In this document: positions 301 to 58,596 of the stretch, piece by piece
Numbering within the stretch: the stretch's first letter is position 1
Layout of the letters: each line of letters starts with the position of its first letter
Source of the DNA: Bugula neritina
Taxonomy: Eukaryota > Animalia > Bryozoa
Assembly (NCBI GenBank): GCA_964035545.1
Contig: OZ037771.1
Coordinates: forward strand, 11,722,480 to 11,786,479
Length of the DNA: 64,000 nucleotides
Direction: 5' to 3'
The notes under the pieces: model-generated
Database searches by the model: none
What the model saw: only the letters and a program-made list of their open reading frames with translations
What the model was told of the DNA's origin: nothing
Made by a program: the position numbers and the translations under genes

Positions 301-457
301 GTGTATTTTATGACACCAAAACAAAAAAGTATAGGTTTCATTCCAAAACTTAAAACCAGACCAAACCTAAAACTCTATAGAGTCTTAGGTTTGGTCTGGT
401 TTTAAGTTCTGGAATGAAACCTATACTTTCTTGTTTTGGTGTCATTCAAATATACAC
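301..457. repeat. Near-perfect ~157 bp palindrome (no loop)
   Basis: Arms 301-377 and 378-457 are reverse complements with a few mismatches around the centre ACTCTA|TAGAGT (372-383). Confidence 0.9.
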
Positions 458-900: not shown

Positions 901-1650
901 TATTTTAAAGACTGCAGTCTTCAAAAAATAAATCTACTAAGTTTATCATTATATATTTCAACTATGAAAACTAAATAAATTTATCTACATTATATAAATC
1001 ATTATAAAGTCTAAAAAAGCTAGTTGGTGCTAATAAAATTAAAATGCAACATTATGTCGTGATTATGAGTATCGCTCAGTGCATGACAAGTAAAGCTGAG
1101 TTAGCATCATTCATTTGAAATTTTCTAGAATTTACAACAGCTTAGTCTAATGCTTTTAGTCTTTAATAAATCAAAAATTGTGCAATCTATTTTAGCCAAT
1201 CAACTTTCAAGCTGTTGTACTAATAAGTTTATAGGTCATAATTGTAGTGGTTCTCGGATAACTTATTCATAAGGTTTAGGGGGTGCTTTCTGTAATTGCT
1301 AAAAAGTAGCCAATATGCAAGAAATTGTAAGAAATAGCTATAAAATAGCTTTTAGTAAAAGTACTTGAAGAAGGATTGACCAATTAAATGCCCTCTTTGG
1401 TAGCTGGTCCAGCCCATCCCTCCCACATATATAAAGTCTCTGATCTACTGGAGCTCACCATTCAAGCACAGATCTTCAAACTGAGAGAAGCTGAATAGAA
1501 GAATTAGTACAGAGCAAGAGTAGCAGAGACACTCCCCTATCTGGAAACTGGTTGGGTATTGAAGATGTGACACCTGGTGCATGGCTGGTTCAGCTGAACT
1601 AAATATTGCATAGAACATGTTTATTGTTTATCTGATAACATGAATAAACC

Positions 1651-1868
1651 GTAACATGTTCTACACAATCTTTAGGACCTACTCTCGTAACATGTTCTAC
1701 ACAATCTTTAGGACCTACTCTCGTAACATGTTCTACACAATCTTTAAGACCTACTCTCGTAACATGTTCTACACAATCTTTAGGACCTACTCTCGTAACA
1801 TGTTCTACACAATCTTTAGGACCTACTCTCGTAACATGTTCTACACAATCTTTAGGACCTACTCTCGT
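1651..1868. repeat. 36 bp minisatellite, 6 copies
   Basis: Unit GTAACATGTTCTACACAATCTTTAGGACCTACTCTC head-to-tail, one substitution in copy 3, no spacers. It explains the repetitive ORFs 1599-1880 and 1656-1922. Confidence 0.95.
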
Positions 1869-4800
1869 CCAAAGCAGCAAAGATGTTTATTTTTATTTGA
1901 TTGGTCAACAAAAGATGATTAGTAATTTTAGTTTTATATAGAATTTTTGAAAGTTTTCTGATAAGACATAGAAATTGTCAAGGTTTCTATATAAACTATA
2001 TTACACTGCACTACTTCAATCAGCTGTGAAGACATTATAATTCTAGCTATAATTCACTGAATTTGATGCTTTTTTTAAGGATTATATAAATATGTCCTTG
2101 GTAATTTAACACTCTATTTTATCTGATATTTTTATATTATAAATAAATGCGTAAATTATACTGTATATACTGCTAGCATAAAATGAGTTTCCTGTTTATT
2201 CTTAAAATACCCTGTTGCCTTACACTATATTCAACAGCTTTTAACTACTAAATCTTAGCAAAAGACTTAGAAACCTCTGTAAAGATATCAGAGTTAGTAA
2301 TAGAACCCTATTAATCTTTCAGATGATTATGTAGAGATTAAAGGTTTTCTATACTAACTCTATATTGGCAAAAGCAACGGTTCTCAAAGAATTATTGAAA
2401 ACAATTTTACTTTTGTAAATATACGTCTTTATTGTCTTTTTTTACAACTTGTTACATTGTGTCAGTTATTTGTAAAAAAATATAAAAAACTATATTTTTG
2501 ATATTACTTCCCCACCATAATTTAAACTGCATTACTCTGCCACACAGTAGAACCTTGCAAAAGCTGGTCTTTCCAAACTGCATGCATTACAATAAGTTGA
2601 TGAAACAAGATAAACCTTATCTTGTTGTACAATTGCTGCTTGTCTGTAAAACGTAGCTGCAATAGAATAGTAGTCCTTCCTTTCTCTAAACTTCCCGTTA
2701 GGTTATAAAACAGCCTTTCTCTACTGCACCTCTTTGATATTCCAAATTTATTAAACAAATTTCAATAATCAACGTGTTGCACTTTTCAAAGCTTATAACT
2801 TAAATTACTTGTCAACACTTTGCGCCTATTATAGGAAAAATTTGAAGAATGACATTGAAAAATGCACTAGCTAATGATGCATCTTGCACTAAATTCTGTC
2901 AAATTATTTATGCAAATAATATTTTGGAAAATACATGAACATTTACCAAGGCAAAATGTGCATTGTTGAAGAACTATTTTAATATTTAAGCCCACTTGTA
3001 AGTCAATAAGCTCAATTTTATAATTATAAGTTGTTTTGAGGCTCTATGTTTTGCAGAAAATTGAATCTACACCAACCCAGTAAAAATTTACAAAACTCTC
3101 TCAATTAGTATCCTGAAAACCGATGAGCTTAAACGTATACCGGTTATAGTTGCTGGAAACCTACAACATAAATCTATCCTAAAATCTAGTAGTTAATTTG
3201 CCTATAAGTAGCAAATGCTTAATAACAGTGACATAGCGTAGTACCTTTAGAATCTAGATGTCACCAACTCTTACAATGTAAACTGGATAAGTCTTTAACA
3301 AACTTACAGCTTTTTAATTTTAAAAATCCATGAATTATATTCTTGCACAGAAAACCTCCTCAAAACTATTTGAAGCCTAATCAAGCCACCTTAAAAGTAC
3401 AACAAAAATATAGCTTGCTTAATTAAAACTTTGTAACTAGCCTTGTATTATCTATGCTAACATTAAAAAGCACAGTCCTTCAGGTTAGCTTGCAAAACTA
3501 GGTTCTATAAGCATTTATCTACGTCATAATAATATGCAGCACATTTTACAAAACACATTTAGGGTTGTCTCACTATCTAAAAACTGAGGATAGAATGATA
3601 TTATAGTCAAATATTCTCATGCAATGACATGACCATAAATAAACAAGTTTGAATTTCTTATAAGCAAGCTTCAAGTTAATTTTATTTGCAAACTATAAAG
3701 TGGACACCAAAATGTTTGTAACTGGAAGATTGTCAAGTCAGACTTTGGTTATTGTACCCCTAATTACAGCATTACTAAATACCCCTTTACCCTACCTTTT
3801 AGCTGAGAACTGACTGTGTGTCCATTGTTACAGTGTACCTAATTTTAGTGCTGGCATTTCATTTTTGCTTGTGTTGGTTCTCTGCTTTTCTCACTCCTGC
3901 TGTTTTCTTGAGAGTAAAAGCAAATGTTCCTTTCTCCAAAGCTCACTGCTACATAATGAAAGGTTGTAACAAATAGCCCAGACCTACTCTGTACCATAAC
4001 TCTGAGAGATTATACAGTAGCCTTGGTGTAATGAGGTGCCTCTGAAATGTTATAATAAATAGCCCGGTGTTTTAGTTTAAAGAAACACGAGAAAGCTATA
4101 ATAATACCACATCCGTTCATTCAAACACTGCCTGTGCAGATGTGTCCACTGAGATCAGTCCTGAAACATCAAATTATAATATTTATAGAGAATTCACAGC
4201 TGATTTCATTGCTTTATTTTTGATTTTCTTTTTAAATGATTCTGGGAAAGTATTATTATTGCCATTACTTTGAATAACACTCAGTAATTCAGGATACTAA
4301 CAAATCTAGTAAAATAACTAAATAAACACCCAAACAAATGAAATATTATATAGAGGCGATACAATACAATGTAATGTACAGCTAATTGGTCTAAACTCTA
4401 AAGCAAAATTTTAAAATATATTTTTAATTTATTTTATAATGACATATTAGTCTAAATGGAGTCTTTTAATAAATTAAGTGGTAATCATTTTTACGGTATA
4501 GACTTACACTGATTGTATTTTATTTGATCAAAAAAGTAAGGAGTTTTTACATGAATTTAGTAATTGCGAAATGAATTAAATAGCTTAACGCTAAATGTTA
4601 GCAAAATTCCAAATTGCAGTAACTCAAAAATTTATGCAAGGGATTGTGTTGGAAAAGCCAGTTTTATCTATTAATCATATTTAGAGCTGAATATAGTAAT
4701 TTTGTTTTTATAACTTAGGTATTTTTGTAGTATATGGTGTAATTCAAATGACAATTTGTTTCAGTTAAGCACCATTAGATGTTATTTATTTTATTGAAAT

Positions 4801-6834: not shown

Positions 6835-6975
6835 CCAATGGATTGCTTTTGCAGAGGAGTCAACTGGGCGTGAACATTCTATCTGGTGGTTCAGCGTCCA
6901 ATCACAAGTCATCTGAGTGGTTGCCCTTTTCCCAGACCAATATAAAGAGCTGCACTTCCAGGGAATCTCAGTGTC
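6835..6975 (+). promoter_or_regulatory. Pol II core promoter, unit 1 (CCAAT boxes, TATA, TCAGT initiator)
   Basis: CCAAT at ~6836, ~6898 and ~6937; TATAAAG at 6941; TCAGT at 6968-6972, with the A 29 nt after the TATA T. This is canonical spacing and is conserved in all three units. Confidence 0.7.
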
Positions 6976-9900
6976 GACCAAGCACCAACAACACCAGAAG
7001 AAGACCTGGAGATGAAACACTTGGACTCTTAATTACTTTGACACATAAAGCAAATCTCAACTGGTTGGGTTTGCAGAAGAATGAAAGATACCGGTAAAGA
7101 ACTATACAAGAACTGCTAAAGAAGAGTTGAACAAGAAATGAAATATACGTTTCAAATCTTAGTCAGGTAATCAACATCACTAACTACTTTCTCTTTATTA
7201 TATCTGCTTCAGAATTTGGTCTTGCTAGCTTCAAACACTCCTATATTTAAACTGGCACATAAATAACTTTACACCATTATTCTAGTTAACATAGAAGAAC
7301 TTCAATCTCTTCTGATAGTAAGGGTTGGGGTAGTTCTATACTAACTGTATTCTGTATATTCTCCAATAGTTTATCTTATCTGCAAACAGAAAACTCATTG
7401 AAAATATTTTAGCTGACAGAAATTATTTTGCATTTTTGCTAACATACAAAGTGTAAGGTGCTCTCTACACCAGCTTCATATTGCTTCATCATAGAACACA
7501 ACTCTACTCTAGTGACAACAACAATATTTTAGTTAACATAAAATAACGTTAGTTTTGTATGATATAATGCATGGAGTTGGGGTGGTTCTATATTAACTGT
7601 ATATTTTACATTCTCCAATATTTTATGTTCATATCTACAAACAGAAAACTCATTGAAAATATTTTAGCTGGCATAGAAATCATCTTACATTTTTTGCTAA
7701 CATACAAAGTGTAAGGTGCTTTCTATACCAGCTCTGTATTCCTTCTTTCATCTGGAACACAACTCTATATTTTAGTGACAACAACAATATTCTAGTTAGC
7801 ATAGAACAACTTTAATCTTGTCTGACAGAAAGTACAAGGTGAGGGTTGTTCTGTACTAACTGTATATTTTGTATTCTCCATCTATATATTCCTTCACCAG
7901 GGAACAGAACTCCAATTTCTAGTTAGAGCAATAGTCTTCTAGTTAACATAGACTTGATCGTGTCTGTCATAAGTCTTTCCAAATAGTTGTGTTAATAATC
8001 TTTTTTTTTTAATTTCAATAGAACTTCATGACTTTCATATCTTCAAAGATCTACTAACAGGAGTAAATTTAAAATATTTTAGCTGGCATAGAAGTCATTT
8101 AACATTTTTTTGCTAACATACAAAAGTGTAAGATGATTTCTATACCAGCTTTATGTTTCTTTGTCAAGGAACACAACTCTATACTCTAGTATCAACAGTA
8201 TATTCTAGTTAAAATAGAACAACTTTAATTCCATATAATATAATGCATGGAGTTGGAGTGATTCTGTACTAATTGTATATTTTGTATCCTCAGTATGACA
8301 GAGCACTGGGTTGGAGTGGTTCTGTAATAACTGTACGTTTTACGTCTACAATTATCACAGCCTATACAAGTATGGCTTTATGAAATATTTTTAATGTCAA
8401 TAGCTTTGAAGACTTTCCAATCTCAATCTTTAAAAATCTACCAACAGAAATCCAATTAAGCTATTTTAGCTGGCATAGAAATAGCTTTGCATTTTTTGTT
8501 GATATACAAAGTGTAAAGTGCTTTCCATACAAGGTTTATGTTCCTTTGTCAGGGAACAGAACTCTACTCTAGTGAGAAACAATATTCTGGTTAGCATAGA
8601 CTTACTTTTACCATGTCTTGTATAATGCACAAGGTGAGAGTTGTTCTATACTAACTGTATCTTATATCCTCAGTTTGATAGAAAGCTCTGAGTTTGGGTA
8701 GTTCTATACTAACTGCATATTTGATGTTTACAATTATCCCAGTCTACCAATATTACTTTATAAAACATTTTCAACTTCTAGTGATATAAGCAACAATATA
8801 CTCTATTCAACATAGAACAACTTCAATTTCATATGGTATAATGCATGGAGTTTGAATAGTTTTAAAGTAAATGTATATATTTTATGACAGAAGCAATATT
8901 CCAGTTACCATAGAACAACTTTTATCCAGTCTGATATATGGCACTGGGTTGGGGTAGTTCTATTGTAACTGTATATTTATTTTATGTCTTCCATTGTCAA
9001 AGCTAATCAATATTGTTTCACCAATTTTTGTTCAAATTTACTAAATATTTTGTACCTTCATATCCTGAAAGGTTCTGCAAACAGAAAGTGATAATTAAAA
9101 CATTTTAGCTGGCATAGAAATCATTTTATACTTTTTGCTAGCATACAAAGTGTAAGGTGCTTTCTATACCAGCTTTCATTTCCTTCATCAGGAAACATAA
9201 CTCTGTATTCTAGTGACAGCAACAATATTCTAGTTAGCATAGAATAACTTTAATCTTGTCTGACAGAAAGTTCAAGGTGAGGGTTGTTCTATACTAACTG
9301 TATATTTTGTATTCTCCATCTATATATTCCTCCATCACGGAACACAACTCCAATTTTTAATTAGAGCAACAGTCTTCTAGTTAACATAGACTTGATCTTG
9401 TCTGTCATAAGTCTTTCCAAATAGTTGTTAATAATTATTATTTTTAATTTCAATAGAACCTCATGACTTACATATCTTCAAAGATCTACCAACAGGAGTA
9501 AATTTGAAATATTTTTAATGTTAATAGCTTTGGAGACTTTCCAATCTCAATCTTTAAAAATCTACCAACAGAAATCCAATTAAACTATTTTAGCTGGCAT
9601 AGAAATCATTTTACATTTTTTGTTATCATATGAAGTGTAAGGTGCTTTCTGTACCAGCTTTTTATTCCTTCATCAGGGAACACAACTCTATACTCCAGTC
9701 ACAACAATATTCTAGTTAACATAGAATAACTTTAATCTTGTCTGATTAAAAGCACAAGGTGAGGGTTAGTCTATACTAACTGTATATTTTTTATTCTCCA
9801 TTTTAAAAATCTCTCAATGTAATTGGTTGTATGACAAGAGAAATTATACAGATGCTGTCTTGGTCATCATCAAAATTAGTAAGAAATCTACAAATAGCAT

Positions 9901-10150
9901 AGTTTTGAATCTAATTCCATATAATATAATACATGGAAGTTGGATCAATCTTGACTATAGCTGTATATTTTATCTAGATCTGCACTTAACAAAGCCTGCC
10001 AATATGTTTTAATTTTTAGTAAACATTGTGATTTTCGATTAGTCAAATATTCTGTGGACTCATTGATCATATTTAGCAGGCATAGAAGCCATTATAAATT
10101 TCCATATGATATAATGCATGTAGTTGGGGTGGTTCTATACTAACTGTATA
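6970..10150 (+). ncRNA. Candidate pri-miRNA host, unit 1: non-coding exon 6970-7166 then ~17 pre-miRNA-like hairpins
   Basis: Donor CAG|GTAATC at 7166. Family A hairpins, e.g. 9107-9174 (AGCTGGCATAGAAATCATTTTATACTTT...AAAGTGTAAGGTGCTTTCTATACCAGCT). Family B hairpins, e.g. 7793-7862 (TAGTTAGCATAGAACAACTTTAATCTTGT...ACAAGGTGAGGGTTGTTCTGTACTAACTG). Many stem mismatches are G:U on +. Confidence 0.65.
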
Positions 10151-10222
10151 TATTTTATATTCTCCAATATTTCATGTTCATATCTACAAACAGAAAACTC
10201 ATTGAAAATATTTTAGCTGGCA

Positions 10223-10356
10223 TCCTTCAGCTATTCCATATTTATGTTTGTGAGTTTCGAAAAGGTTTATAAGAGCTGCAACATATCTAGTGTGAAGTTC
10301 ATTGATCTCTTCAGATGTTGGGGTATCGTTCTGGTCTACTTCTATTGGTGAACCAA
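10223..10356 (-). pseudogene. Duplicated, truncated MOGAT last exon (dead copy)
   Basis: Translates (V)GSPIEVDQNDTPTSEEINELHTRYVAALINLFETHKHKYGIAEG, then is fused to array sequence. The acceptor AG is mutated to AC (10357-10358). Confidence 0.85.
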
Positions 10357-12310
10357 GTAAAAACAAGAGCTGAAAGGTTTATATTGTATTACCCATCACT
10401 TTCAAAAACACTGTGATAACATTAAGATGTAAATACCAATCTACTCTCCAGTCTTCATTATTGTATGTTTCGCAGTATATTACAAGCAGTCTCATGGCTA
10501 CATAATGAAAGGTTGTCACAAAAAGCTCAGACCTACTCTGTACCATGGTGCTAAAGGATTATACAATAGCCTTGGTGTAATAAGGTGCCACTGAAATATT
10601 ATAATAAATAGCCAAGTGTTTTAGTTTAATGAAACAAAAAAAAATAATAATACCATATCTGTTCATCCTAACACTGCCTGGGCAAATGTGTCCACTAAGA
10701 TCAGTCCTGAAACACTAAATTGTAGAAAGTTCACTGCTGATCTTTTTGCTCTATTTCTGATTTTATTTTTAAATGATTCTGGGAAAGTATTATTATTGCC
10801 ATTACATTGAATAACACTCAGTAATTCTGAATACTAACAATTCTAGTAAAAAAACTAAATAAACACCCAAACAGATGAAATATTATATAGATATGATACA
10901 ATACAATGTAATGTACAGCTAATTAGTCTAAACTCTAAAGCAAAATTTTAAAATATCTTTTAAATTTATTTTATGATGACATATTAGTTCAAATGGAGTG
11001 TTTTAATAAATTAAGTTGTTATCATTTTACGGTATGGACTTATACTGATTGTATTTTATTTGATCGAAAAAAGTGAGGAGTTTTTACATGAATATAGTAA
11101 TTGCGAAATGAATTAAATAGCTTAGCGCTAAATGTTAGCAAAATTGCAAATTGCAGTGACTCAATAATTTATGCAAGGGATTGTGTTGGAAAAGCCAGTT
11201 TTATCTATTAATCCTATTTTATAGCTGAATATAGTTATTTTGTTTTTATAACTTAGGTATTTTTGCAGAACGTGGTGTAATTTAAATGGCAATTTGTTTT
11301 AGTTAAGCACTATTAGATGTTATTTATTTAATTAAAATTCTAAATTCTAAAACAAATATCTTATAAAACTAAAAGCATTAATTCATAAAGTCCTTCTTAT
11401 AAAAATACTTAGATACTCATGCTGTTATATGAATCATGTTGCCATTCTATACACTGAACAAACAACAACTAAAGTTAAAATTAGTTGAAAATTCAAAAAA
11501 TTATTTGTTTTAAGCGTGTAAAAATTGACAGCATGAGAGAATTTTAATTAATACTGTGTCTTTTTTAACGGAAACACAATTAAAAGATGTGTAGTAAAGA
11601 AATTTTAACTAACTATTTGTGAAAGCTAACGCTGCTTATGATCTTGCTATACCAGATAAAACATTGGTATTATTTGTTTTTGATAATTGAATAATTGAAA
11701 TCTGTGTAACTGTTAGTAGATTATAATATTTTATAGAATATCACTTTTAAAAATGTACTCACTGACTATTTTTGAATGATTATATTTATAAACCTGATGC
11801 TAAAATTATAATTGAAACCTGTGTACTTGAACTACAAAACCAGCATATAATGTAGAAAATAGAACTTGAAACTGAGGCTGTGAGATGTTTTGCTTTTTAT
11901 ATATTACTACTCTATTATCGTTAGGAGGAAATATACATATTAGCAGCAAGAGTTTACTTGAGAAAAATAAGGAGGCTCATAGTATGCTAAATTAATTTAC
12001 CTGGCCCATATTGTAAACTGTGTGTCACTATGTAGCAAATTTGTGAGAAATGCTACTGAGAAGTTCCTAGGGTTACTTGAGCTCTTATTTCTGGACTGAA
12101 TAATATAATGAAAGAACTGGTAAAGGAAGCATGGAAAACTATTATTAGTTAGTAAAGCAGCAGTAGCTGTCAAAGCGAAAGCAAATATATTATTAAAGCT
12201 TTTGTTTTTATCAGCTTTCATGTTAGTTATCCCTATCCAGTTTCATTTTCTAAGAAGTGCTGATGTTGTTTGCAAGGACAAAACTCACATTTGACCTAAA
12301 AAAAATAAAA

Positions 12311-12450
12311 CCAATGGATTGCTTTTGTAGAGGAGTCAACTGGGCGTGAACATTATATTTGGTGGTTCAGCGTCCAATCACAAGTCACCTGAGTGGTTGC
12401 CCTTTTCCCAGACCAATATAAAGAGCTGCACTTCCAGGGAATCTCAGTGT
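12311..12450 (+). promoter_or_regulatory. Pol II core promoter, unit 2
   Basis: TATAAAG at 12417, TCAGT at 12444-12448, upstream CCAAT boxes; paralogous to unit 1. Confidence 0.7.
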
Positions 12451-15400
12451 CAACCAAGCACCAACATCAGAAGAAGACCTGGAGATGTAACACTTGGACT
12501 CTTAATCACTTTGACACATAAAGAAAATCTCAACTGGTTGGGTTTGCAGAAGAATGAAAGATACTGGTAAAGAACTATACAAGAACTGCTAAAGAAGAGT
12601 TGAACAAGAAATGAAATATACGTTTCAAATCTTAGTCAGGTAATCAACATCACTAACTACTTTCTCTTTATTATATCTGCTTCAGAATTTGGTCTTGCTA
12701 TCTTCAAACACTCCTATATTTAAACTGGCACATAAATAACTTTACACCATTATTCTAGTTAACATAGAAGAACTTCAATCTCTTCTGATAGTAAGGGTTG
12801 GGGTAGTTCTATACTAACTGTATTCTGTATATTATCCAATAGTTTATCTTATCTGCAAACAAAAACTCATTGAAAATATTTTAGCTGGCATAGAAATCAT
12901 TTTGCATTTTTTGCTAACATACAAAGTGTAAGGTGTTTTCTATACCAGCTCTGTATTCCTTCTTTCACCTGGAACACAACTCTATATTTTAGTGACAACA
13001 ACAATATTCTAGTTGGCATAGAACAACTTTAATCTTGTCTGACAGAAAGTTCAAGGTGAGGGTTGTTCTATACTAACTGTATATTTTGTATTCTTTATCT
13101 ATATATTCTTTCATCAGGGAACACAACTCCAATTTCTAATTAGAGCAACAGTCTTCTAGTTAACATAGACTTGATCTTGTCTGTCATAAGTCTTTCCAAA
13201 TAGTTGTTAATAATTATTATTTTTAATTTCAATAGAACCTCATGACTTTCATATCTTCAAAGATCTACCAACAGGAGTAAATTTAAAATATTTTAGCTAG
13301 CATAGAAGTCATTTAACATTTTTTTGCTAACATACAAAAGTGTAAGATGATTTCTATACCAGCTTTATGTTTCTTTGTCGGGGAACACAATTCTATACTC
13401 TAGTATCAACAGTATATTCTAGTTAACATAGAACAACTTTAATTCCATATAATATAATGCATGGAGTTGAAGTGATTCTATACTAATTGTATATTTTGTA
13501 TCCTCAGTATGACATAGAGCACTGGGTTGGGGTGGTTCTGTAATACCTGTACGTTTTAAGTCTACAATTATCACAGCCTATACAAGTATGGCTTTATGAA
13601 ATATTTTTAATGTTAATAGCTTTGTAGACTTTCCAATCTCAATCTTTAAAAATCTACCAACAGAAATCCACTTAAACTATTTTAGCTGGCATAGAAATAG
13701 CTTTACATTTTTTGTTGGTATACAAAGTGTAAGGTGCTTTCCATACAAGCTTTATGTTCCTTTGTCAGGGAACAGAACTCTACTCTAGTGAGAAACAATA
13801 TTCTAGTTAGCATAGACTTACTTTTACCATGTCTTGTATAATGCACAAGTTGAGAGTTGTTCTATACTAACTGTATCCTATATCCTCAGTTTGATAAAAA
13901 GCTCTGAGTTGGGGTAGTTCTATACTAACTGTATATTTCCCAGTCTACCAAAATTGCTTTATAAAACATTTTCAACTTCTAGTGATATAAGCAACAATAT
14001 ATATTCTATTTAACATAGAACAACTTCAGTTTCATATGGTATAATGCATGGAGTTTATATAGTTTTATAGTAAATGTATATTTTAAGAAAGAAACAATAT
14101 TCCAGTTAACATAGAACAACTTCTTTCCAGTCTGATATATAGCACTGGGTTGGGGTAGTTCTATATTAACTGTATATTTATTTTATGTCTTCCATTGTCA
14201 AAGCTCATCAATATTGTTTCACAAATTTTGTTCAAATTTACTAAATATTTTGTACCTTCATATCCTGAAAGGTTCTGCAAACAGAAAGTCATTATTAAAA
14301 CATTTTAGCTGGCATAGAAATCATTTTATACTTTTTGCTAGCATACAAAGTGTAAGGTGCTTTCTATACCAGCTTTCTATTCCATCATCAGGGAACATAA
14401 CTCTGTATTCTAGTAACAGCAACAATATTCTAGTTAGCATAGAATAACTTTAGTCTTGTCTGACAGAAAGCACAAGGTTAAGGTTGTTCTATACTAACTG
14501 TGTATTTTATGTCCTCTGTATCCTCAGTCAGCACTGCAAACGATAATTCATTTAAACTATTTTAGCTGGCATAGAAATAATTTTACATTTTTTGTTATCA
14601 TATGAAGTGTAAGGTGCTTTCTATACCAGCTTTATATTCCTTCATCAGGGAACACAACTCTATACTCTAGTCACAACAATATTCCAATTAACATAGACTT
14701 ACTTTAATCTTGTCTGATATCTAAAGCACAAGGTGAGGGTAATTCTATACTAATTGTATATTTTATGTCTACTGTTATCCCAGTCTAAGAATATTGCTTA
14801 ACAAAACAAATTTAATTTTAGTAAAGCTTTATGACTATCATATTTTTAAAGTTCTGTAACCAACAACTATTCATTTGAATAATTTTACGTATTTTGCTAA
14901 CATACAAAGTGTAAGGTGCTTTCCATACCAGCTCTATATTCCCTCATCAGGGAACAAAACTCTATTCTAGCACCATCATATCTTGAAATGTTCTGCAAAC
15001 TGAAATTCATTTAAACTATTTTAGCTGCCATACAAGGTGCTTTTTATACTAGCTTTATATTCCTTCATCAGGGAACACAACTCTATATTCTAGTGACAGC
15101 AATAATAGTTTAGTTAACATGAAACAAACATAATTCTACATGATATAAAGCAAGGGTTGGGGTGATTCTATACTAACTCTATATATTGTATGTCCTTGTC
15201 AATATTGCTTTACAAAATTTTTCCTAAATTATTCAAACATTACCAAAGCCTTTGCACTTTTATATCCTAAAATGCTCTGCAACTAGAAAGCATTGAAAGT
15301 GATTTAGCTGGCATAGAAATAATTTATTACTTTTCTCCCCCATACAAGGTGTAAAGCTCCAATACCATCTTTATATTCCTTCATCAGAAAACACAACTCC

Positions 15401-17070
15401 AGTTTTTAGTTACAGCAACAAAAAAATTTAGTCAAAGTGGAACAACTTTTACCCAGCAAAGATATATTATATCATTTGGGTCTTTCCTTATTAACTCTAT
15501 TATGTTATACCTAAAATTATCTCGACCTACCAATATTGCTTTATAAAAGATTTTCAAGTAAAGCTTTATGGCAATCATACCTTCAAAGATCTACCAACAA
15601 CCGTTCATTTGAAATATTATTTTAGCTGGCATAAAATTCATTTTACATTTTTGCTAACATACAAAGTGTAAGGTGCTTTCTGTACCAGCTTTATATTTCT
15701 CTATCAAGAAACACAACTGCTTATTTTAATGACAGCAAAAACTGTTTAGTTAACATACACCAGGAACTTTATATGTATGTTGTTTTATCAGGGGACACAG
15801 CTCTTTATTCTAGTGACAACAATGTTCTAGTTAGCATAGAACAACTTCTATCCAGTCTAATATAGAGCACTGAGTTGGGGTAGTTCTATATTAACTGTAT
15901 ATTTTATGTCTGCAATTATCCTAGCCTACCAAGTATTTTCAACTTCTAGTGATAGCAACAATATTCTAGTTAACATAGAATAACTTTAATCTTGTCTGAT
16001 CAAAAGCACAAGGTGAGGGTTAGTCTATACTAACTGTTTATTTTTTATTCTCCATTTTCACAACCCCTCAATGAAATTAGTTGTATGACAGAAGAAATTA
16101 TACAGATGCTGTCTTGGTGGCATAGTTTTGAATCTAATCCATATAGTATAATACATGAAGTTGGATAAATCTTGACTATGGCTGGCTGTGTATTTTATCT
16201 CGATATATGCATTTAACAAAGCCTCTCAATATGTTTTAAGTTTTAGTAAAGATTGTGATTTTCAATTAGTTAAATATTCTGTGGACAGAACAACTCATTG
16301 AAAATATTTAGCAGGCATAGAAATAATTTTAAATTTCCATATGATATAATGCATGTAGTTGGGGTGGTTCTATACTAACTGTATATATTTTATATTCTCC
16401 AATATTTTATGTTCATATCTACAAACAGAAAACTCATTAAAAATATTTTAGCTGGCATGGAAACAATCTGGTATTTTTTGCAAACCTACAAAATGTAAGG
16501 TGCTTTTTATACCAGCTTTATATTCGCTCATCAGGGAACACAACCCTATATTCTAGTCACAACAATATTCCAGTTAACATAGACTTACTTTAATCTTGTC
16601 TGATATCTAAAGCACAAGGTGAGGGTAATTCTATACTAACTGTATATTTTATGTCTAATATTATCCCTGCCTACCAATATTGCTTAACAAAAAAATTTCA
16701 GTTTTAGTAAAGCTTTATGACTATCATATCTTCAAAGATCTGCAACCAACAACTGTTCTTTGGAAATAATTTTCTATTTTATGCTAACATACAAAGTGTG
16801 AAGTGCATTCTATACCAGCTTTATATTCCTTCATCAGGGAACACAACTTTATATTCTAGTTACAGCAACAATATATTCTAGTTAACATAGAACAACTTTA
16901 ATCTTGTCTGACAGAAAGTACAAGGTGAGGGTTGTTCTATACTAACTGTATATTTTGTATTCTTCATCTATATATTCCTTCATTAGGGAACACAACTCCA
17001 ATTTTTAGTTAGAAAAACCTCTATCCAGTCTGATATATTGCATTGGGTTGTGGTGGTTCTATTGTAACTG
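12446..17070 (+). ncRNA. Candidate pri-miRNA host, unit 2: non-coding exon 12446-12639 then ~22 hairpins
   Basis: Donor at 12639. Alternating family A/B hairpins, e.g. 14103-14172 CAGTTAACATAGAACAACTTCTTTCCAGT-loop-ACTGGGTTGGGGTAGTTCTATATTAACTG. Confidence 0.65.
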
Positions 17071-17875
17071 TATATATATTTTATGTTTTCCATTGTCAAA
17101 GCTAATCAATATTGCTTTCCAAAAATGATGTCTTTGATATTTTACAAAAAGGTCGGAAATGGCTATATCTCAACTATTATTCTGGGCAAACAAACTAATA
17201 ACAGTGATCAGGGTGCAATGGTTAGGTGGCCCATTGTGCCCAGTGTGGCCAAGTTGAAAATAAATGTGGTTCAAGGAAAATTTATTTTAGAGTTTGCTAT
17301 TATACTAGTTGAGCAATGTAGAGACAAGCAATGGCAACAATATCAGTAGAACCTAAGCTTGTTAGCTTTGAGTGCAACAAGTTATAAAGCTTTTATGACA
17401 TGTACAAAAAGTAGGCAAAAACAGTTTTTGACTCGCCTCTTCAACATGTATGCTCTGCAAGTGTTGAAACTACAATGGTTGAATAATTACGTCATTGCCT
17501 TTTTATTAAAGAAAAATTACAAATCTAAGTCACTAAGTTCTCTCACAATTTAACTGGCTTTTTGTACCCCTATGACAGTTGTGCCACTCCCCCCTCTGTT
17601 ACCCCTATATGTCTGGTATTAGAATATCCTCATACATAAGCTATTGTAAATTAAACTGTGATTACCAAAATACTTGTATAATTGAGTAACAACACCATTA
17701 TTTTTATGGTGTTGATACAAACATGATATATTGCTGCATATTTAAATTTTGATTTCTAACAAAATCAATACATTATTTCATAATTAATAATATTAAACTG
17801 GCTTAAAAAGTCTCTAAGTTTAGCATTTTTTTGAATTCTCAATAGGAATTCATTATTCAAAGCAGTATCGTTTTC

Positions 17876-18030
17876 TTAAAACAAGTTCAAGTGGGTTCCT
17901 TTAGCTACTTCATATTTTTGTTTGTGAGTTTCAAAGAGGTCTATGAAAGCTGCAACATATCTAGTGTGAGGTTCATTGATCTCTTCAGATGTTGGGGTAT
18001 CGTGCTGGTCTACTTCTATTGGTGAACCAA
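17876..18030 (-). CDS. Duplicated MOGAT last exon, intact (possible alternative terminal exon)
   Basis: 155 nt like the parent exon, intact TTTTTAG acceptor, open frame (V)GSPIEVDQHDTPTSEEINEPHTRYVAAFIDLFETHKQKYEVAKGTHLNLF*. Homology is certain; use in transcripts is unproven. Confidence 0.5.
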
Positions 18031-20477
18031 CTAAAAACAAGAGCTGAAAGGTTTATATTGTATTACCCATCACTTTCAAAAACACTGGGATAATATTAAG
18101 ATGTAAATACCAATCTACTCTCCAGTTTTCATTATTGTATGTTTCACAGTATATTACAAGCAGTCTCATGCCTACATTATGAAAGGTTGTTACAAAAAGC
18201 CCAGACCTTCTCTGTACCAGGGTGCTAAAAGATTATGCAATAGCCTTGGTGTAACGAGGTGCCACTGAAATATTATAATAAATAGCCAGGTGTTTAATGA
18301 AACACACAAAAATAATAATACCATATCTGTTCATTCAAACACTGCCTGGGCAGATGTGTCCACTGAGATCAGTCCTGAAACACTAAATTATAGAAAGTTT
18401 ACAGCTGATTTTATTGCTTTATTTCTGATTTTATTTTTAAATGATTCTGGGAAAGTATTATTATTGCCATTAGCAAACAGTTTGAATCATATAACAATTC
18501 CCATTATATATTTTTCTGTTAGCTACTAAACTGCCATATGAAAACAATGATGACTTATATAAGGTCAACTGTAGGTGTGATATGTTAACGACTTTTAACT
18601 TTTGCTAAAAATAATGTTCACCAATCTTAATAATAAATATAAAACTTTAAAACTCTTAAGCATTATAATCATTTATAGGGCACCATGCATATTTCATAAA
18701 GCACAAAGTGGTTGCATCTCTGTTTTCTGCCATTTTTCTCTGGGACCTGTGTTTCTACATATAAGCACAACAGGTAATGTTTGTTTGAAAATGAAAGTAG
18801 GGATGACATTTACTATGCTTTACATAATCAGGTTCCCATAAGTAATAATTAGATTGGGTACAAACTGAAAGTTTATGTACTTAGTAATTTCACTATCTTA
18901 TAATTAAGGGTTTCCTTAAAACTGTTGCTCCTGCCAGGCACATCTGTCAGACAGGTTTTAGCTAGAAATCCAACATTAGACTTTTATTGCCCAAAACTAG
19001 CTCAGCTGGCTTTCTGGTCACAAGGTAAATTATAGTTATAAGTTCTACAGGTAATTCTTTAAATAGGGGGCTTTTAATAAAGGTAAACTATTTGCAAACA
19101 GTTATTAACAAAGAAAGAAGTGAAAATGGCTGAAGAATTTTACGAATAAAGACTACCACTAAATATTTGAGAAAGTATTATACTAGGCTAACTAATTTTT
19201 TCTGCCACAGACCCTTGAACTCAACCTAGCTGCTCTCAAGTTACTGCAATATGAAATAAAAAATTAAATATAACTCTCCTACATAAATTCATTTAAAATT
19301 CTATATATTAACCAATATAGATATGACAAGCTTATCTCCAGGCAGCTAATTATAGCATAGCTCTAACTAAAGACAAATTACATCAAATTCATTTCTATAT
19401 GATAAGGTTTTGTAGGATTTTTACTAAAAAAACTACAAAACTAAAAAATAGGAAAATAGATGAAGTAAAATTTAATTTAATCATCGTAGAGATCTTTACT
19501 GTTTTCAATTCTAAAACAAATAATTTATAATTTAACTAAATGCATTAATTTATAAAGTCCCTCTTATAAAACTACTTAGGTACTCATGGTGCGATATGAA
19601 TCATGTTGCCATTCTATACACTGAACAAACAACTACAGTCAAAACTAGTTTAAAATTCATGAAAATTATTTGTTTTAAGCGTGTAACAATGGACAGCATG
19701 AGATAATTTTAATAAAACTGTGTCTTTTTTAGCACAAACACAATGAAAAGATGTGTAGTGGAGAAATTTGTGAAAGCTAACGCTGCTTATGGTCTTGCTA
19801 TACCAGATAAAACCTTGGTAATATTTGTTTTTGATAATTGAATAATTGAAATCTGTGTAACTGTTGGTAGATTATAATATTTTATAGAATATAACTTTTG
19901 AAAATGTACTCACTGACTATCTTTGAATAATTATATTTATAAACCTGATGCTAAAATTATAATTGAAACCTGTGTATTTGGACCACAAAATCAGCATATA
20001 ATGTAGAAAATAAAACTTGAAACTAAAGTTATTTGATGTTTTGCTTTTTATTTATTACTACTCTATTATCGTTAGGAGAAAATATACATATTAGCAGCAA
20101 GAGTTTACTTGAGAAACATTAAGGAGGCTCATAGTATGCTAAATTAATTTACCTGGCCCATATTGTAAAGTGTGTATCATTATGTAGCAAATTTGTGAGA
20201 AATGCTACTGAGAAGTTCCTAGGGTTAGTAGAGCTCTTATTTCTGGATTGAATAATATAATGAAAGAACTGGTAAAGAGAGCTTGGAAAACTATTATTAG
20301 TTAGCAAGGCAGCAGTACCTGCCATAAACACACCAGGTAGTCAAAAGCAAATGTATTATCAAAGCTTTCAGCTTCATCAGCTTTCATGTTATAAGTTATC
20401 CCTATCTAGTTTCATTTTCTAAGAAGTGCTTATGTTGTTTTCAAGGACAAAACTGTGTTTGACCTAAAAAAATAAAA

Positions 20478-20617
20478 CCAATAGATTGCTTTTGCAGAGG
20501 AGTCAACTGGGCGTGAACATTCTATTTGGTGGTTCAGCGTCCAATCACAAGTCATCTGAGTGGTTGCCTTTTTCCCAGACCTATATAAAGAGCTGCACTT
20601 CCAGGGAATCTCAGTGT
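20478..20617 (+). promoter_or_regulatory. Pol II core promoter, unit 3
   Basis: TATATAAAG at 20582-20590, TCAGT at 20611-20615, upstream CCAAT boxes; paralogous to unit 1. Confidence 0.7.
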
Positions 20618-23600
20618 CAACCAAACACCAACATCAGAAGAAGATCTGGAGATGTCACACTTGGAATCTTAATCACTTTGACACATAAAGCAAATCTCAA
20701 CTGGTTGAGTTTGCAGAAGAATGAAAGCTACTGGTAATGAACTATACAAGAACTGCTAAAGAAGAGTTGAACAAGAAATGAAATACGTTTCAAATCTTAG
20801 TCAGGTAATCAACATCACTAACTACTTCCTCTTTATTATATCTGCTTCAGAATTTGGTCTTGCTATCTTCAAACACTCCTTTATTTAAACTGGCATATAA
20901 AAAACCTCAAACCATTAGTGACTCAACAATATTCTAGTTAACATAGAAGAACTTCAATCTCTTCTGATATGAAGGGTTGGGGTAGTTCTATACTAACTGT
21001 ATTCTGTATATTCTCCAATAGTTTATCTTATCTGCAAACAGAAAACTCATTGAAAATATTTTAGCTGACATAGAAATCATTTTGCATTTTTTGCTAACAT
21101 ACAAAGTGTAAGGTGCCTTCTATACCAGCTTTCTATTCCTTCATCAGGGAACATAACTCTGTATTCTAGTGACAGCAACAATATTCTAGTTAGCATAGAA
21201 TAACTTTAATCTTGTCTGACAGAAAGTACAAGGTGAGGGTTGTTCTACACTAACTGTATTTTATGTCCCCTGTATCCTCAGTCAGCACTAGGTTGGGGTG
21301 GCTCTCTACTGTATATTTTATGTTTACAACTTTTAAAGTTTGTCAATATTGCTTTACAAATCTGTTTCTATTTTATTAAAGCTTTTGCACCTTCATATCT
21401 TGAAATGTTCTGAAAACTGAAATTCATTAAAAATATTTTAGCTGGCATACAAGGTGCTTTCTATACCAGCTTAATATTCCTTTATCAGGGAACACAACTC
21501 TATACTCTAGTCACAACAATATACCAGTTAACATAGACTTACTTCAATCTTGTCTGCTATCTAAAGCACAAGGTGAGAGTTATTCTATACTAACTGTATA
21601 AAAATCATTTCATACTTTTTGCCTACATACAAAGTGTATAAGGTGCTTTTTATACCAGCCTTACACTCGTTCATCAGGGAACACAACTCAAAATTACAAG
21701 AAAAATATTCTAGTTAGCATAGAATAACTTTAATCTTGTCTGACAGAAAGCACAAGGTTAAGGTTTTTCTATACTAGCTGTGTATTTTATGTCCTCTGTA
21801 TCCTCAGTCAGCACCGCAGACGAAGATTCATTTAAACTATTTTAGCTGGCATAGAAATCATTTTACATTTTTTGTTATCATATGAAGTGTAAAGTGCTTT
21901 CTATACCAGCTTTATATTCCTTCATCAGGGAACACAACTCTATACTCTAGTCACAACAATATTCCAATTAACATAGACTTACTTTAATCTTGTCTGATAT
22001 CTAAAGCACAAGGTGAGGGTAATTCTATACTAATTGTATATTTTATGTGTACTGTTATCCCAGTCTAGGAATATATATATTGCTTAACAAAAAAATTTCA
22101 GTTAACATAGCTTTTGCATTTTCATATCTTAAAATGCTCTGCAACCAGAAAGCATTGAAAGTGATTTAGCTGGCACAGAAATAATATTTTTCTCCCCCCC
22201 CCTCATACAAGGTGTAATGCTCTAATACCATCTTTATATTCCTTCATTAGAGAACACAACTCCAGTTTTTAGCTACAGCAAAAAATTCTTAGTCAAAGTG
22301 GAACAACTTTTACCCAGCAAAGATATATAGCATTTGTTTGGGTCTTTCCTCGTTAACTCTATGTTATACCTACAATTATCTCAGCCTACCAATATCGTTT
22401 TATAAAATATTTTCAAGTAGAGCTTTATGGCTATCATACCTTCAAGGATCTACCAACAATTGTTCATTCAAAATATTATTTTAGCTGGCATAAAATTCAT
22501 TTTACATTTTTTGCTAACATACAAAGTGTAAAATGCTTTCTATACCAGCTTTATATTCCTTCATCAGGGAACACAACTGCTTATTTTAATGACAACAAAA
22601 ACTGTTTAGTTAACATACACCAGGAGCTTTATATGCATGTTGTTTTATCAGGGGACACAACTCTTTATTCTAGTGCTAGTGACAACAATATTCTAGTTAG
22701 CATAGAACAATTTCTATCCAGTCTGATACAGAGCACTGGGTTGGGGTGGTTCTATATTAACTGTATATATTATGTCTGCAATTACCCTAGCCTACCAAGT
22801 ATTTTCAACTTCTAGTGACTACAACAACAATATTCTAGTTAACATAGAACAACTTTAATCTTGTCTGACAGAAAGTACAAGGTGAGGGTTGTTCTATACT
22901 AGCTGTATATTTTGTATTATCCATATATATACTCTTTCATCAGGGAACACAACTCAAAATTACACCAAAAATACTCTAGTTAACATAGAACAACTTCTAT
23001 CCAGTCTAATACAGAGCACTGGGTTGGGGTAGTTCTATATTAATTGTATATTTTATGTCTGCAATTACCCCAGCCTACCAAGTATTTTCAACTTCTAGTG
23101 ATAGCAACAATATTCTAGTTAACATAGAATAACTTTAATCTTGTCTGATTAAAAGTACAAGGTGAGGGTTGTTCTGTACTAACTGTGTATTTTTTATTCT
23201 TCATTTTCAAAACCTCGCAATGTAATTGGTTGTATGACAGAAGAAATTATACAGATGCTGTCTTGGTCATCATAAAAACTAGTAAGACATCGATAAGTGG
23301 CATAGTTTTGAATCTAATCCATATAATATAATACATGGAAGTTGGATAAATCTTGACTGGCTGTTATATATTTTATCTCGATATGCAAAGCCTATCAATA
23401 TGTTTTAAGTTTTAGTAAAGATTGTGATTTTCAATTAGTTAAATAGTCTGTGGACAGAATAACTCATTGATAATATTTAGCAGGCATAGAAATCATTTTA
23501 AATTTCCATATGATATAATGCATGGAGTTGGGGTGGTTCTATACCAACTGTATATATTTTATATTCTCCAATATTTTATGTTCACATCTACAAACAGAAA

Positions 23601-24245
23601 ACTCATTAAAAATATTTTAGCTGGCATGGATACAATCTGGTATTTCTTGCAAACCTACAAAATGTGAGGTGCTTTCTATACCAGTTTTATATTCCTTCAT
23701 CAGACAACACAACTCTATATTGTAGTCACAACAATATTCCAGTTAACATAGACTTACTTTAATCTTGTCTGATATCTAAAGCACAAGGTGAGGGGAATTC
23801 TATACTAACTGTATATTTTATGTCTACTGTTATCCCAGCCTACCTATATTGCTTAACAAAAAATTTTAATTTTACTAAAGCTTTATGAGTATCATATCTT
23901 TAAAGATCTGCAACCAACAACTGTTCATTTGAAATATTTTTCTATTTTATGCTAACATACAACGTGTAAAATGCTTTCCATACCAGCTCTATATTCCTTC
24001 AACAGGGAACACAACTTTATATTCTAGTTACAGCAACAATATATTCTAGTTAACATAGAACAACTTTAATCTTGTCTGACAGAAAGTACAAGGTGAGGGT
24101 TATTCTATACTAACTGTAATATAATCCTTCATTAGGGAACACAACTCCAATTTTTAGTTAGAGCAACAGTCTTCCAGTTAACATAGAAAAACCTCTATCC
24201 AGTCTGATATATTGCATTGGGTTGTGGTGGTTCTATTGTAACTGT
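20613..24245 (+). ncRNA. Candidate pri-miRNA host, unit 3: non-coding exon 20613-20804 then ~20 hairpins
   Basis: Donor at 20804. The same hairpin families run from ~20934 to ~24245. Confidence 0.65.
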
Positions 24246-25010
24246 ATATATATTATGTTTTCCATTGTCAAAGCTAATCAATATTGCTTTACAAATGATG
24301 TCTGATATTTTTCAAAAATGTCCGAAAGGGCTATATCTATAGATTTTATTAACATCTCAACTATTATTCTGAGCAAACAAACTAATAACAGTGATCAGGG
24401 TGCAATGGTCAGGTGGCCCATTGTGCCCAGTGTGGCCAAGTTGAAAATAAATGTGGTTCAAGGAAAATTTATTTTAGAGTTTGCCATTATACTAGTTAAA
24501 CAATGTAGAGACAAGCAATGGCAACAATATCAGTAGAACCTAGGCTTGTTACCTTTGAGTGCAACAAGTTAAAAAACTTTTATGACATGTACAAAAAGTA
24601 GGCAAAAACAGTTTTTGACTCCCCTCTTCAACATGTATGCTCTGCAAGTGTTGAAACTACAATGGTTGAATAATTACGTCATTGCCTTTTTATTAAAGAA
24701 AAATCACAACTCTAAGTCAATAGGTTCTCTCACAATTTAACTGGCTTTTTGTACCCCTATGGCAGTTGTGCCACTCCCCCATCACCCCCCTCTGTTACCC
24801 CTATATGTCTGGTATTGGACTATCCTCATACATAAGCTATTGTAAATTAAACTGTGATTACCAAAATACTTGTATAATTGAGTAACAACACCATTATTTT
24901 TATGGTGTTGATACAAACATGATATATTGCTGCATATTTAAATTTTGATTTCTAACAGTATTTTTTTGAATTATCAATATGAATTCATTATTCAAAGCAG
25001 TATCGTTTCC

Positions 25011-53770: not shown

Positions 53771-54703
53771 CTCAGTTTTTAAATGCTGAATAATAAATAT
53801 TGTTTACACAGACCAACTCCCAGTCTTCAAGTGTTGAGAGACTAAGCAGATGGGTATCAGAGACTACGTCAGTCAGTTTCATCTAAACTGATAATATAAC
53901 TATATAATATAGTAACTTTCCAGAGAGGATAATATGACAACTGGGATTTCACAGCCGATTGTCTAAAATATTAACTTCTTTACCTCAAGCTGTGTGTCAC
54001 TGCAAATTACACTATCAAATAATTTAAACAATAAACAATATTACGATGCGGCTAGCCATAATACATTGCACAATTGGCACAGGTACAAATAGCGCAGGTA
54101 ATAATAGCACAAATAAAAAAAGTAAGTAAAATAGAACACTGATGTTGCTTTTGGCCACACCTAAACCCCAATTCCTAGCCAACCAATTCCAAATCCCAAA
54201 CCTCAAACAACTACTCCTAACCTCTAAACCTCAAATCCTATATCACCTTCAACCCCCAAACCCCAAACCCCAAACCCTCAAACCCAAACATATACTCTCA
54301 GTTTTAACCCAAAATTTCCCAACAATAAAAATGTACTAGTTTTGCCTACTTTTCCATTTGTGCAATTAATTATTGCACCTGCAAATTTACCTGTAATATT
54401 TTTATTGCATCATTTTAACCTGTGTCAGCTAGTATTTTTTTGTGTCATTTTAACAAAACATCATAAGACTTTTTACATCATATAATAACAAGTTGAATTA
54501 ATAATATAGCTGGTGCCATTATGGAAGGATGTATTATATTATACAGTAAATTTCTAGAAGATATAATAGCTGTCATAATAGACTGCTGACATACATGATA
54601 TTTTAAACACCTGAGCTTTCACAGCTGGTTGTTAAAAATACTATCTTCCTTACTTCAAGCTGTGAGTTATTTATAAGAGCTGCACAATCAAACTAATTGA
54701 ACA

Positions 54704-58596
<3,893 letters not shown>

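What the first reader, a model, noticed from the sequence alone, without database searches (positions are those of the whole stretch)
7280..24245. Large array of pre-miRNA-like hairpins: candidate undescribed polycistronic small-RNA locus
Seen: what looks like messy satellite is a string of ~70-nt stem-loops every ~100-200 bp, roughly 55-65 by manual count in three blocks (7.3-10.1, 12.7-17.1 and 20.9-24.2 kb). Family A is AGCTGGCATAGAAATCATTTTACATTTT-loop-AAAGTGTAAGGTGCTTTCTATACCAGCT. Family B is TAGTTAACATAGAACAACTTTAATCTTGT-loop-ACAAGGTGAGGGTTGTTCTATACTAACTG. Both share a CATAGAA...TTCTATA core. Many stem imperfections are U:G on + but would be A:C on -, which points to + strand RNA structure rather than DNA palindromy. 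Stems are ~30-35 bp with 10-13 nt loops, and family A has a CNNC motif (CATC) 17 nt after TTCTATA. Known: these are Drosha/DGCR8 substrate features. Inference: a cut UAGAA.../...UUCUAUA gives 22-nt duplex arms with 2-nt overhangs (B: UAGAACAACUUUAAUCUUGUCU / ACAAGGUGAGGGUUGUUCUAUA). I do not recognise the arms as a known miRNA family.
Basis: partly seen in the sequence, partly recalled or inferred. Interest (0 to 1): 0.92.

Follow-up and report, generated by a model that had tools for sequence, protein, structure and literature searches.

The report
Bryozoan multicopy microRNA gene cluster
A colonial sea animal (the bryozoan Bugula neritina) carries about 80 related RNA hairpins under five copies of one promoter; they look like an undescribed microRNA family selected to fold as RNA, but no small-RNA data were available to show that they are made.

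Summary
The window is Bugula neritina chromosome 7. Three blocks hold 65 family units (42 intact hairpins), spaced about 135 bp apart, all on the + strand. Families A and B are one superfamily. Each block follows its own CCAAT–TATA–Inr promoter and a ~197-nt leader ending in a splice donor. A fourth block lies ~105 kb away, one solo copy 7.5 Mb away, and an older single-copy unit at window 1380–2370. The family is not dispersed, so it is not a MITE. Stems show selection on sense-strand RNA: Watson-Crick pairs changed to G:U 48 times and to A:C about 20 times (22 vs 6 on internal branches), and spacers show no such mutational bias. There is no Rfam match and no homolog outside this genome in the little animal data searchable. 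Best reading (0.8): a lineage-specific multicopy pri-miRNA cluster, like miR-430 or Tribolium mir-3851/3836. No RNA run was available, so expression, processing and function are untested. The scan noted this same stretch before, and a possibly similar cluster elsewhere in this genome.

The parts
6896..6972 (+). Block 1 core promoter: CCAAT 6898, TATAAA 6941, initiator-like TCAGT with A at 6970 (29 nt after the first T of TATAAA)
   Evidence: same element before all four blocks and nowhere else in the genome; function inferred
6970..7166 (+). Block 1 non-coding leader / first exon, ending at donor-like CAG|GTAA (GT at 7167)
   Evidence: promoter plus leader 3.9% diverged between blocks vs 6.3% for flanks; no acceptor or second exon found
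7275..10223 (+). Hairpin block 1: 17 units plus half-units, cut off in mid-unit at 10223
12372..12641 (+). Block 2 promoter (CCAAT 12374, TATAAA 12417, Inr A 12446) and leader to donor GT 12640
12748..17078 (+). Hairpin block 2: 27 units
20539..20806 (+). Block 3 promoter (CCAAT 20541, TATAAA 20584, Inr A 20613) and leader to donor GT 20805
20927..24252 (+). Hairpin block 3: 21 units; covered end to end by contigs of public run X1
1378..2374 (+). Older, diverged, single-copy unit of the same family: CCAAT 1380, TATATAAA 1428, donor-like GT 1556, hairpins at 1921-2006 and 2283-2368, weaker ones at 1603-1674 and 2009-2092
   Evidence: The 1921 and 2283 hairpins were in the model's training alignment, so their scores are not independent; the shared core, the fold and the similar promoter are the evidence.
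7800..7857 (+). Example family B precursor in the preferred 58-nt register (5p starts CAUAGAA; 3p ends 2 nt past the C:A mismatch)
   Evidence: inferred
24380..24830 (+). Dispersed high-copy repeat after block 3 (copy at 17193-17634); a neighbour, not part of the hairpin family and not a second exon
   Evidence: 459 candidates genome-wide; depth ~85,000 in X1
25002..26864 (-). Last three exons of a MOGAT/DGAT2 gene, tail to tail with block 3; last-exon fragments also follow blocks 1 and 2 and mark the duplication unit
   Evidence: a copy also lies beyond block 4

Best explanation
A Bugula-lineage multicopy microRNA locus. Each block is a Pol II transcription unit: CCAAT/TATA/Inr promoter, a ~197-nt non-coding leader with a splice donor, then 16-27 tandem hairpins, probably intronic (anatomy shown; transcription inferred). 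Drosha/Pasha would cut each ~35-bp stem about 11 bp above its base to release a ~58-nt precursor, which Dicer trims to a ~22-nt duplex (inferred). The 5p arm, with a mismatched weak 5' end and the seed AUAGAA in 50 of 62 units, is the likely shared guide. The varied 3p arms could add about a dozen further seeds (inferred, about 0.55 for 5p dominance). One promoter firing would give a high dose of one seed family. By analogy with miR-430, miR-309 and the Tribolium clusters, the likeliest use is bulk mRNA clearance in a short developmental window: early embryo about 0.4, germline about 0.3, metamorphosis or budding about 0.3 (analogy only). History: an old single unit (window 1.4-2.4 kb), a tandemly amplified A-B dimer, then segmental duplication of promoter + array + MOGAT tail into four blocks.
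For: (1) Strand-specific structure: hairpin density and folding favour the promoter strand. (2) On a tree of 58 distinct units, WC->G:U 48 vs WC->A:C 19.5 events (binomial p=0.0009); 22 vs 6 on internal branches (p=0.004); 26 vs 14 on tips, so A:C changes are purged. In unpaired spacers the G:U-making transitions are not faster (C>T 2.1, A>G 1.4 vs G>A 2.8, T>C 1.8 per column). (3) 88% of cells pair, 14 of 27 pairs have changes on both sides, covariation 0.42 vs 0.07-0.16 for slid controls; about 10 double and 38 G:U->WC events on the tree. (4) One promoter per block, same orientation in all four blocks including the inverted one; conserved more than flanks (p=0.002). (5) Core length is 54 nt in 43 of 62 units, with pairing from -15 to +22 in family B. 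(6) ATAGAA has 1.2 changes per column vs about 5 in the rest of the 5p arm, 3.5 in the candidate 3p seed and 1.7 in its own partner strand. (7) No AATAAA on the sense strand of blocks 1-3 vs 13 expected (units not independent). (8) Confined to chromosome 7.
Against: No RNA data at all. Between block copies the stems are only slightly better kept than spacers (5.2% vs 7.5%, p=0.001) and not clearly better than outer flanks (6.3%, p=0.08), and the 3p arm and loop diverge about equally. About a third of units are broken or weak. No basal UG at the canonical place; CNNC in at most 28/62; a 5' C is unusual for a guide (own knowledge). The basal extension pairs weakly in family A (probability ~0.3). 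Gene conversion makes the tree-based counts approximate. No homolog was found in another species. No second exon was found.
Confidence: 0.8

Rival explanations
1. A once-functional or still partly functional miRNA unit whose tandem copies now evolve mostly as satellite: most of the ~80 hairpins are redundant or silent, and the structural signal is largely inherited.
For: Weak constraint between recent block copies; many half-units and chimeric units; G:U bias is weaker on terminal branches (26 vs 14).
Against: Promoters and leaders are better conserved than flanks in all four blocks; 42 window units are intact; the seed-like hexamer is nearly invariant.
Confidence: 0.09
2. A structured long non-coding RNA, or a source of endo-siRNA or piRNA, rather than Drosha-cut miRNAs; the hairpins would be repeated protein-binding modules or would be diced without fixed register.
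For: Sense-strand RNA structure and a Pol II promoter fit this too; the conserved core could be a protein-binding site.
Against: Unit geometry (about 35-bp stem, fixed core length, short loop, unpaired spacers) is that of pri-miRNAs. The two arms tested have no near-perfect match elsewhere beyond two 3-mismatch hits at control level and one 2-mismatch sense hit. The array contains no transposon fragments.
Confidence: 0.07
3. Non-transcribed palindromic satellite or MITE relics; hairpins are DNA inverted repeats kept by gene conversion.
For: AT-rich tandem A-B repeat with unequal-crossover history; one solo copy 7.5 Mb away; some A units fold equally well on both strands.
Against: A DNA palindrome predicts G:U = A:C; observed 230 vs 39 cells and 48 vs 20 events. 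No dispersal, unlike the true dispersed repeat next door. The solo copy carries about 35 nt of 3' spacer beyond the inverted repeat, so it is not bounded by TIRs. All blocks are oriented with their promoter.
Confidence: 0.04

Closest known systems
Tribolium castaneum multicopy microRNA clusters, mir-3851 / mir-3836 (PMC4691753)
   Same: Species-specific families in large clusters of paralogs that differ in copy number, sequence and order; shared seeds across diverged hairpins.
   Different: No sequence relationship tested positive; the Tribolium clusters lie at several genomic places and have small-RNA and early-embryo expression evidence, this one has none.
Zebrafish miR-430 locus (bioRxiv 10.1101/2021.08.09.455629; role as summarised in PMC4691753)
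   Same: Repeated promoter-plus-hairpin units with TATA-box promoters; more than 50 paralogs; one dominant seed (here inferred).
   Different: miR-430 has the AAGUGC seed on the 3p arm (own knowledge); here the closest 3p sequence is AAGUGU in family A only. Five promoters with up to 27 hairpins each, not many short promoter-triplet units. No Rfam match.
Drosophila testis-restricted recently evolved miRNA clusters (as described in PMC4238352) and the mir-309~6 cluster
   Same: Fast turnover by local duplication and divergence.
   Different: Far fewer hairpins per cluster (own knowledge); tissue here unknown.
MITEs and palindromic satellites
   Same: Short inverted repeats, tandem amplification.
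   Different: Not dispersed, strand-biased wobble pairs, dedicated promoter, mobile fragment not bounded by the inverted repeat.

Membership tests
Canonical (Drosha/Dicer) microRNA genes | Single imperfect hairpin, about 35-bp stem with unpaired flanks (PMC6298569) | tested here: met
   family B pairs from -15 to +22; the basal 5 bp are weak in family A
Canonical (Drosha/Dicer) microRNA genes | Structure kept by selection on the RNA strand (compensatory and wobble changes) | tested here: met
Canonical (Drosha/Dicer) microRNA genes | Both arms expressed as 20-26 nt reads with homogeneous 5' ends and 2-nt 3' overhangs | not testable with these tools
   no RNA run holds the stretch; X1 is contigs only and behaves like DNA
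Canonical (Drosha/Dicer) microRNA genes | Processing motifs: CNNC, basal UG, apical UGU, mismatched GHG (each optional) | tested here: inconclusive
   CNNC at 16-18 nt in 15-28 of 62 units depending on register; basal UG absent at the canonical place; UGU near the 5p end of many B units and no mismatched GHG, by inspection only
Canonical (Drosha/Dicer) microRNA genes | Mature arm conserved more than loop and star arm, seed most of all | tested here: inconclusive
   the seed-like hexamer is slowest across the family, but between block copies arms 4.9% and 5.8% vs loop 6.1%
Canonical (Drosha/Dicer) microRNA genes | Dependence on Drosha/Pasha and Dicer; machinery present | tested here: inconclusive
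   RNase III domain exons on C3 and C9, not assigned to genes; dependence untestable
Any named Rfam miRNA family (including mir-430) | Match to the family model at gathering score | tested here: not met
   none at gathering; best weak hit mir-651, 27 bits vs 106 needed. miRBase and MirGeneDB were not searched directly.
MZT-type clusters (miR-430, mir-309~6, Tribolium mir-3851/3836) | Burst of expression at zygotic genome activation and seed enrichment in cleared maternal mRNAs | not testable with these tools
   no staged RNA data or 3' UTR set available
MITE | Dispersed copies bounded by TIRs with target-site duplications | tested here: not met
   dispersal and boundaries tested, TSDs not searched separately

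The most novel reading that the evidence does not exclude
An active bryozoan counterpart of miR-430 or miR-309 that arose independently: about 80 hairpins under five TATA promoters, delivering one shared 5p seed plus a diversifying set of 3p seeds to clear mRNAs at a life-cycle switch (zygotic activation, metamorphosis or budding). I found no such cluster reported for Bryozoa or, in one narrow search, other spiralians.
Probability: 0.35. Interest if true: 0.78.

Novelty: new member of a known kind. Interest (0 to 1): 0.6.

Why it matters
I found no paper on bryozoan microRNAs in the library searched. If expressed, this one family would be a large share of the hairpins in a typical invertebrate miRNA set (own knowledge), and profile-based annotation would miss it. 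Large fast-evolving clusters are known from fish, insects and mammals. A bryozoan case would test whether they recur across Bilateria as a way to clear mRNAs at developmental switches. The locus also keeps its own history (old single unit, A-B dimer, four duplicated blocks, one solo copy), which shows how arms and seeds diversify. Predicted start sites, precursor ends and seeds make it testable with one sequencing experiment.

Tried and rejected
Rfam at gathering and E-value thresholds: nothing meaningful. Resemblances recalled from memory (miR-430 tail, miR-281 CAUGGAGUUG, miR-8 star) are out of register or limited to one subtype; dropped. A second exon at 24395 and 17200 was considered and rejected: it is a dispersed high-copy repeat; no convincing acceptor was found. 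Homologs elsewhere: a JGI metagenome pattern scan gave 27 isolated hits, none arrayed; the best is a near-perfect palindrome picked out by the pattern. Metagenome contigs with MOGAT exons 74-75% identical (organism unnamed) have no family hairpin in 10 kb upstream or 3 kb downstream; orthology is unproven. In one search my two innermost pairs were mis-registered over a gap column, which only lowers the scores. The sigma-70 scan is irrelevant to a eukaryote.

Full report
Organism and place. The window is G000:C7:11722480-11786479 of a 216.0-Mb assembly. FoxA from this genome is 98% identical to Bugula neritina FOXA1. Assembly size and the 15.81-Mb length of C7 match chromosome 7 of tzBugNeri2.1 (PMC11480708), a HiFi assembly.

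Observation. A motif-anchored fold and an unbiased scan both show the array: 4.0 hairpins per kb in the three blocks vs 0.75 outside on +, and no enrichment on - (1.4 vs 1.2). Families A and B align column for column over the arms. A covariance model finds 17, 27 and 21 units in the blocks, spaced 131-139 bp, of which 42 are intact single hairpins; about nine half-units lie between them. Median z against dinucleotide shuffles is -4.6, and the sense strand folds better in 52 of 62 units. Contigs of one public run cover all of block 3; its independence from the assembly is not established.

Anatomy. The blocks are segmental duplicates, 85-95% identical. Each begins with the same element: CCAAT, TATAAA, an initiator-like TCAGT whose A is 29 nt after the first T of TATAAA, and a ~197-nt leader ending CAG|GTAA. 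This element has exactly four copies in the genome. The fourth is at C7:11.615-11.618 Mb on the - strand and heads 16 more units in its own orientation. One solo A unit lies at C7:4218299. At window 1380-2370 is an older single-copy unit with a similar CCAAT/TATA promoter, a donor-like site and two clear plus two weak hairpins with the same core. A MOGAT/DGAT2 gene lies tail to tail with blocks 3 and 4, and its last exon follows blocks 1 and 2, so the duplicated unit was promoter + array + MOGAT tail. Genome-wide, all model matches are on C7 (only the best 150 candidates were scored). Pattern hits elsewhere are at control level and the eight I tested do not match the model.

RNA or DNA? A DNA palindrome should gather G:T and A:C mismatches equally. 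Paired cells are 230 G:U vs 39 A:C. On a tree of 58 distinct units, Watson-Crick pairs change to G:U 48 times and to A:C 19.5 times; 22 vs 6 on internal branches and 26 vs 14 on tips (p = 0.0009 and 0.004). Unpaired spacers show no mutational bias in that direction (few columns). Fourteen of 27 pairs show changes on both sides, and covariation is 0.42 vs 0.07-0.16 when partners are slid (related sequences inflate such scores). Promoter plus leader diverge 3.9% between blocks vs 6.3% for flanks (p = 0.002). Stems diverge 5.2% vs 7.5% for spacers (p = 0.001) but not significantly less than flanks (p = 0.08). Per-copy constraint is therefore weak, as expected for redundant copies, but this is also the main caution. 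AATAAA is absent from the sense strand of blocks 1-3 (13 expected) but present twice in block 4; suggestive only.

Mechanism. Drosha measures about 11 bp from the basal junction of a ~35-bp stem, helped by optional motifs (PMC6298569). In family B pairing runs to 14 nt past the conserved TTCTAT. A 3' end 3 nt past TTCTAT leaves exactly 11 nt and gives a 58-nt precursor starting CAUAGAA. That register also maximises CNNC at 16-18 nt (28/62 vs 15, 17, 23 for the other three), makes the 5p end the weaker end in 41/43 units by a rough pair score, and puts AUAGAA at seed positions 2-7 in 50/62 units. That hexamer is the slowest-evolving part of the family, including the old unit (1.2 changes per column vs about 5 elsewhere in 5p and 3.5 in the candidate 3p seed). 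The 3p arms carry about 12 different seeds in any register. All of this is inference from sequence. The run search found no RNA holder.

Targets and relatives. Two representative arms have no convincing near-perfect match outside the family, so seed-type targeting is more likely than siRNA-like slicing. Rfam has no matching family. No homolog appeared in JGI metagenomes or near MOGAT genes of unnamed relatives, but these collections hold few animal genomes, so lineage restriction is likely and not shown.

Comparison. It works like the multicopy clusters of Tribolium (PMC4691753) and the TATA-driven miR-430 locus (bioRxiv 10.1101/2021.08.09.455629). It is not a member of any Rfam family. The feature that defines a microRNA, precise small-RNA reads, could not be tested. 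Fast-evolving clusters can also be testis-restricted (PMC4238352), so the stage of action is open. I found no report of bryozoan microRNAs.

Earlier notes. The scan had noted the promoters (s1-451207) and 3p-seed diversification (s1-451101) on this DNA. I had seen the promoters before that look-up and tested both. My data confirm varied 3p seeds but point to a shared 5p seed as well. Another candidate cluster elsewhere in the genome (s1-456879) was not matched by my model and was not examined.

Verdict. Real and strongly non-random. Probably (0.8) an undescribed, lineage-specific multicopy microRNA cluster of about 80 hairpins in five transcription units. New member of a known kind; interest 0.6, held down by the lack of any expression data.

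Noticed in passing
window 1650-1868: Tandem repeat of 6.1 x 36 bp, 98% matched, whose unit begins with the 3' arm of the old-unit hairpin at 1603-1674.
   Followed up: partly
window 9889-9968, about 16110-16180 and 23298-23375: A third, strongly diverged hairpin type inside each block (core ATAG..CTAT); the block 1 copy folds at -20.6 kcal/mol but barely matches the model.
   Followed up: partly
G000:C3:29360899-29360920: Isolated 20/22 sense match to the family A 3p arm with no 5' ATAG partner upstream; control pattern had no hits. Chance or a stray fragment.
   Followed up: partly
L013:5300-5410 (G000:C7:4218299): Solo family A hairpin with about 35 nt of its 3' spacer, 7.5 Mb from the cluster; still folds (z -5.6) and has compensating changes; no promoter copy near it.
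   Followed up: partly
window 20556-20917: Run X1 shows only the block 1/2-type promoter-leader sequence here, not the block 3 form; possible haplotype or copy-number difference.
   Followed up: no
window 335-420: Near-perfect 39-bp inverted repeat (-58 kcal/mol) that folds equally on both strands; unrelated to the family, likely a DNA element relic.
   Followed up: no
window 55612-58516 (-): LINE retrotransposon with endonuclease and reverse transcriptase in two frames.
   Followed up: no
window 52780-53793 (+): GC-rich LTR-retrotransposon-like gag/protease fragments; no Pfam hit.
   Followed up: no
window 30709-31830 (+): Exons with ShK-like cysteine patterns (CVDNRWEC.. and a second at about 31720-31820); no Pfam hit for the first ORF.
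   Followed up: no
window 49898-50197 (-): Macro-domain exon (PF01661).
   Followed up: no
L011:1-5825 vs window 17125-28736: A second MOGAT/DGAT2 copy, about 93% identical, lies beyond block 4, so the gene was duplicated with the cluster in inverted orientation.
   Followed up: partly
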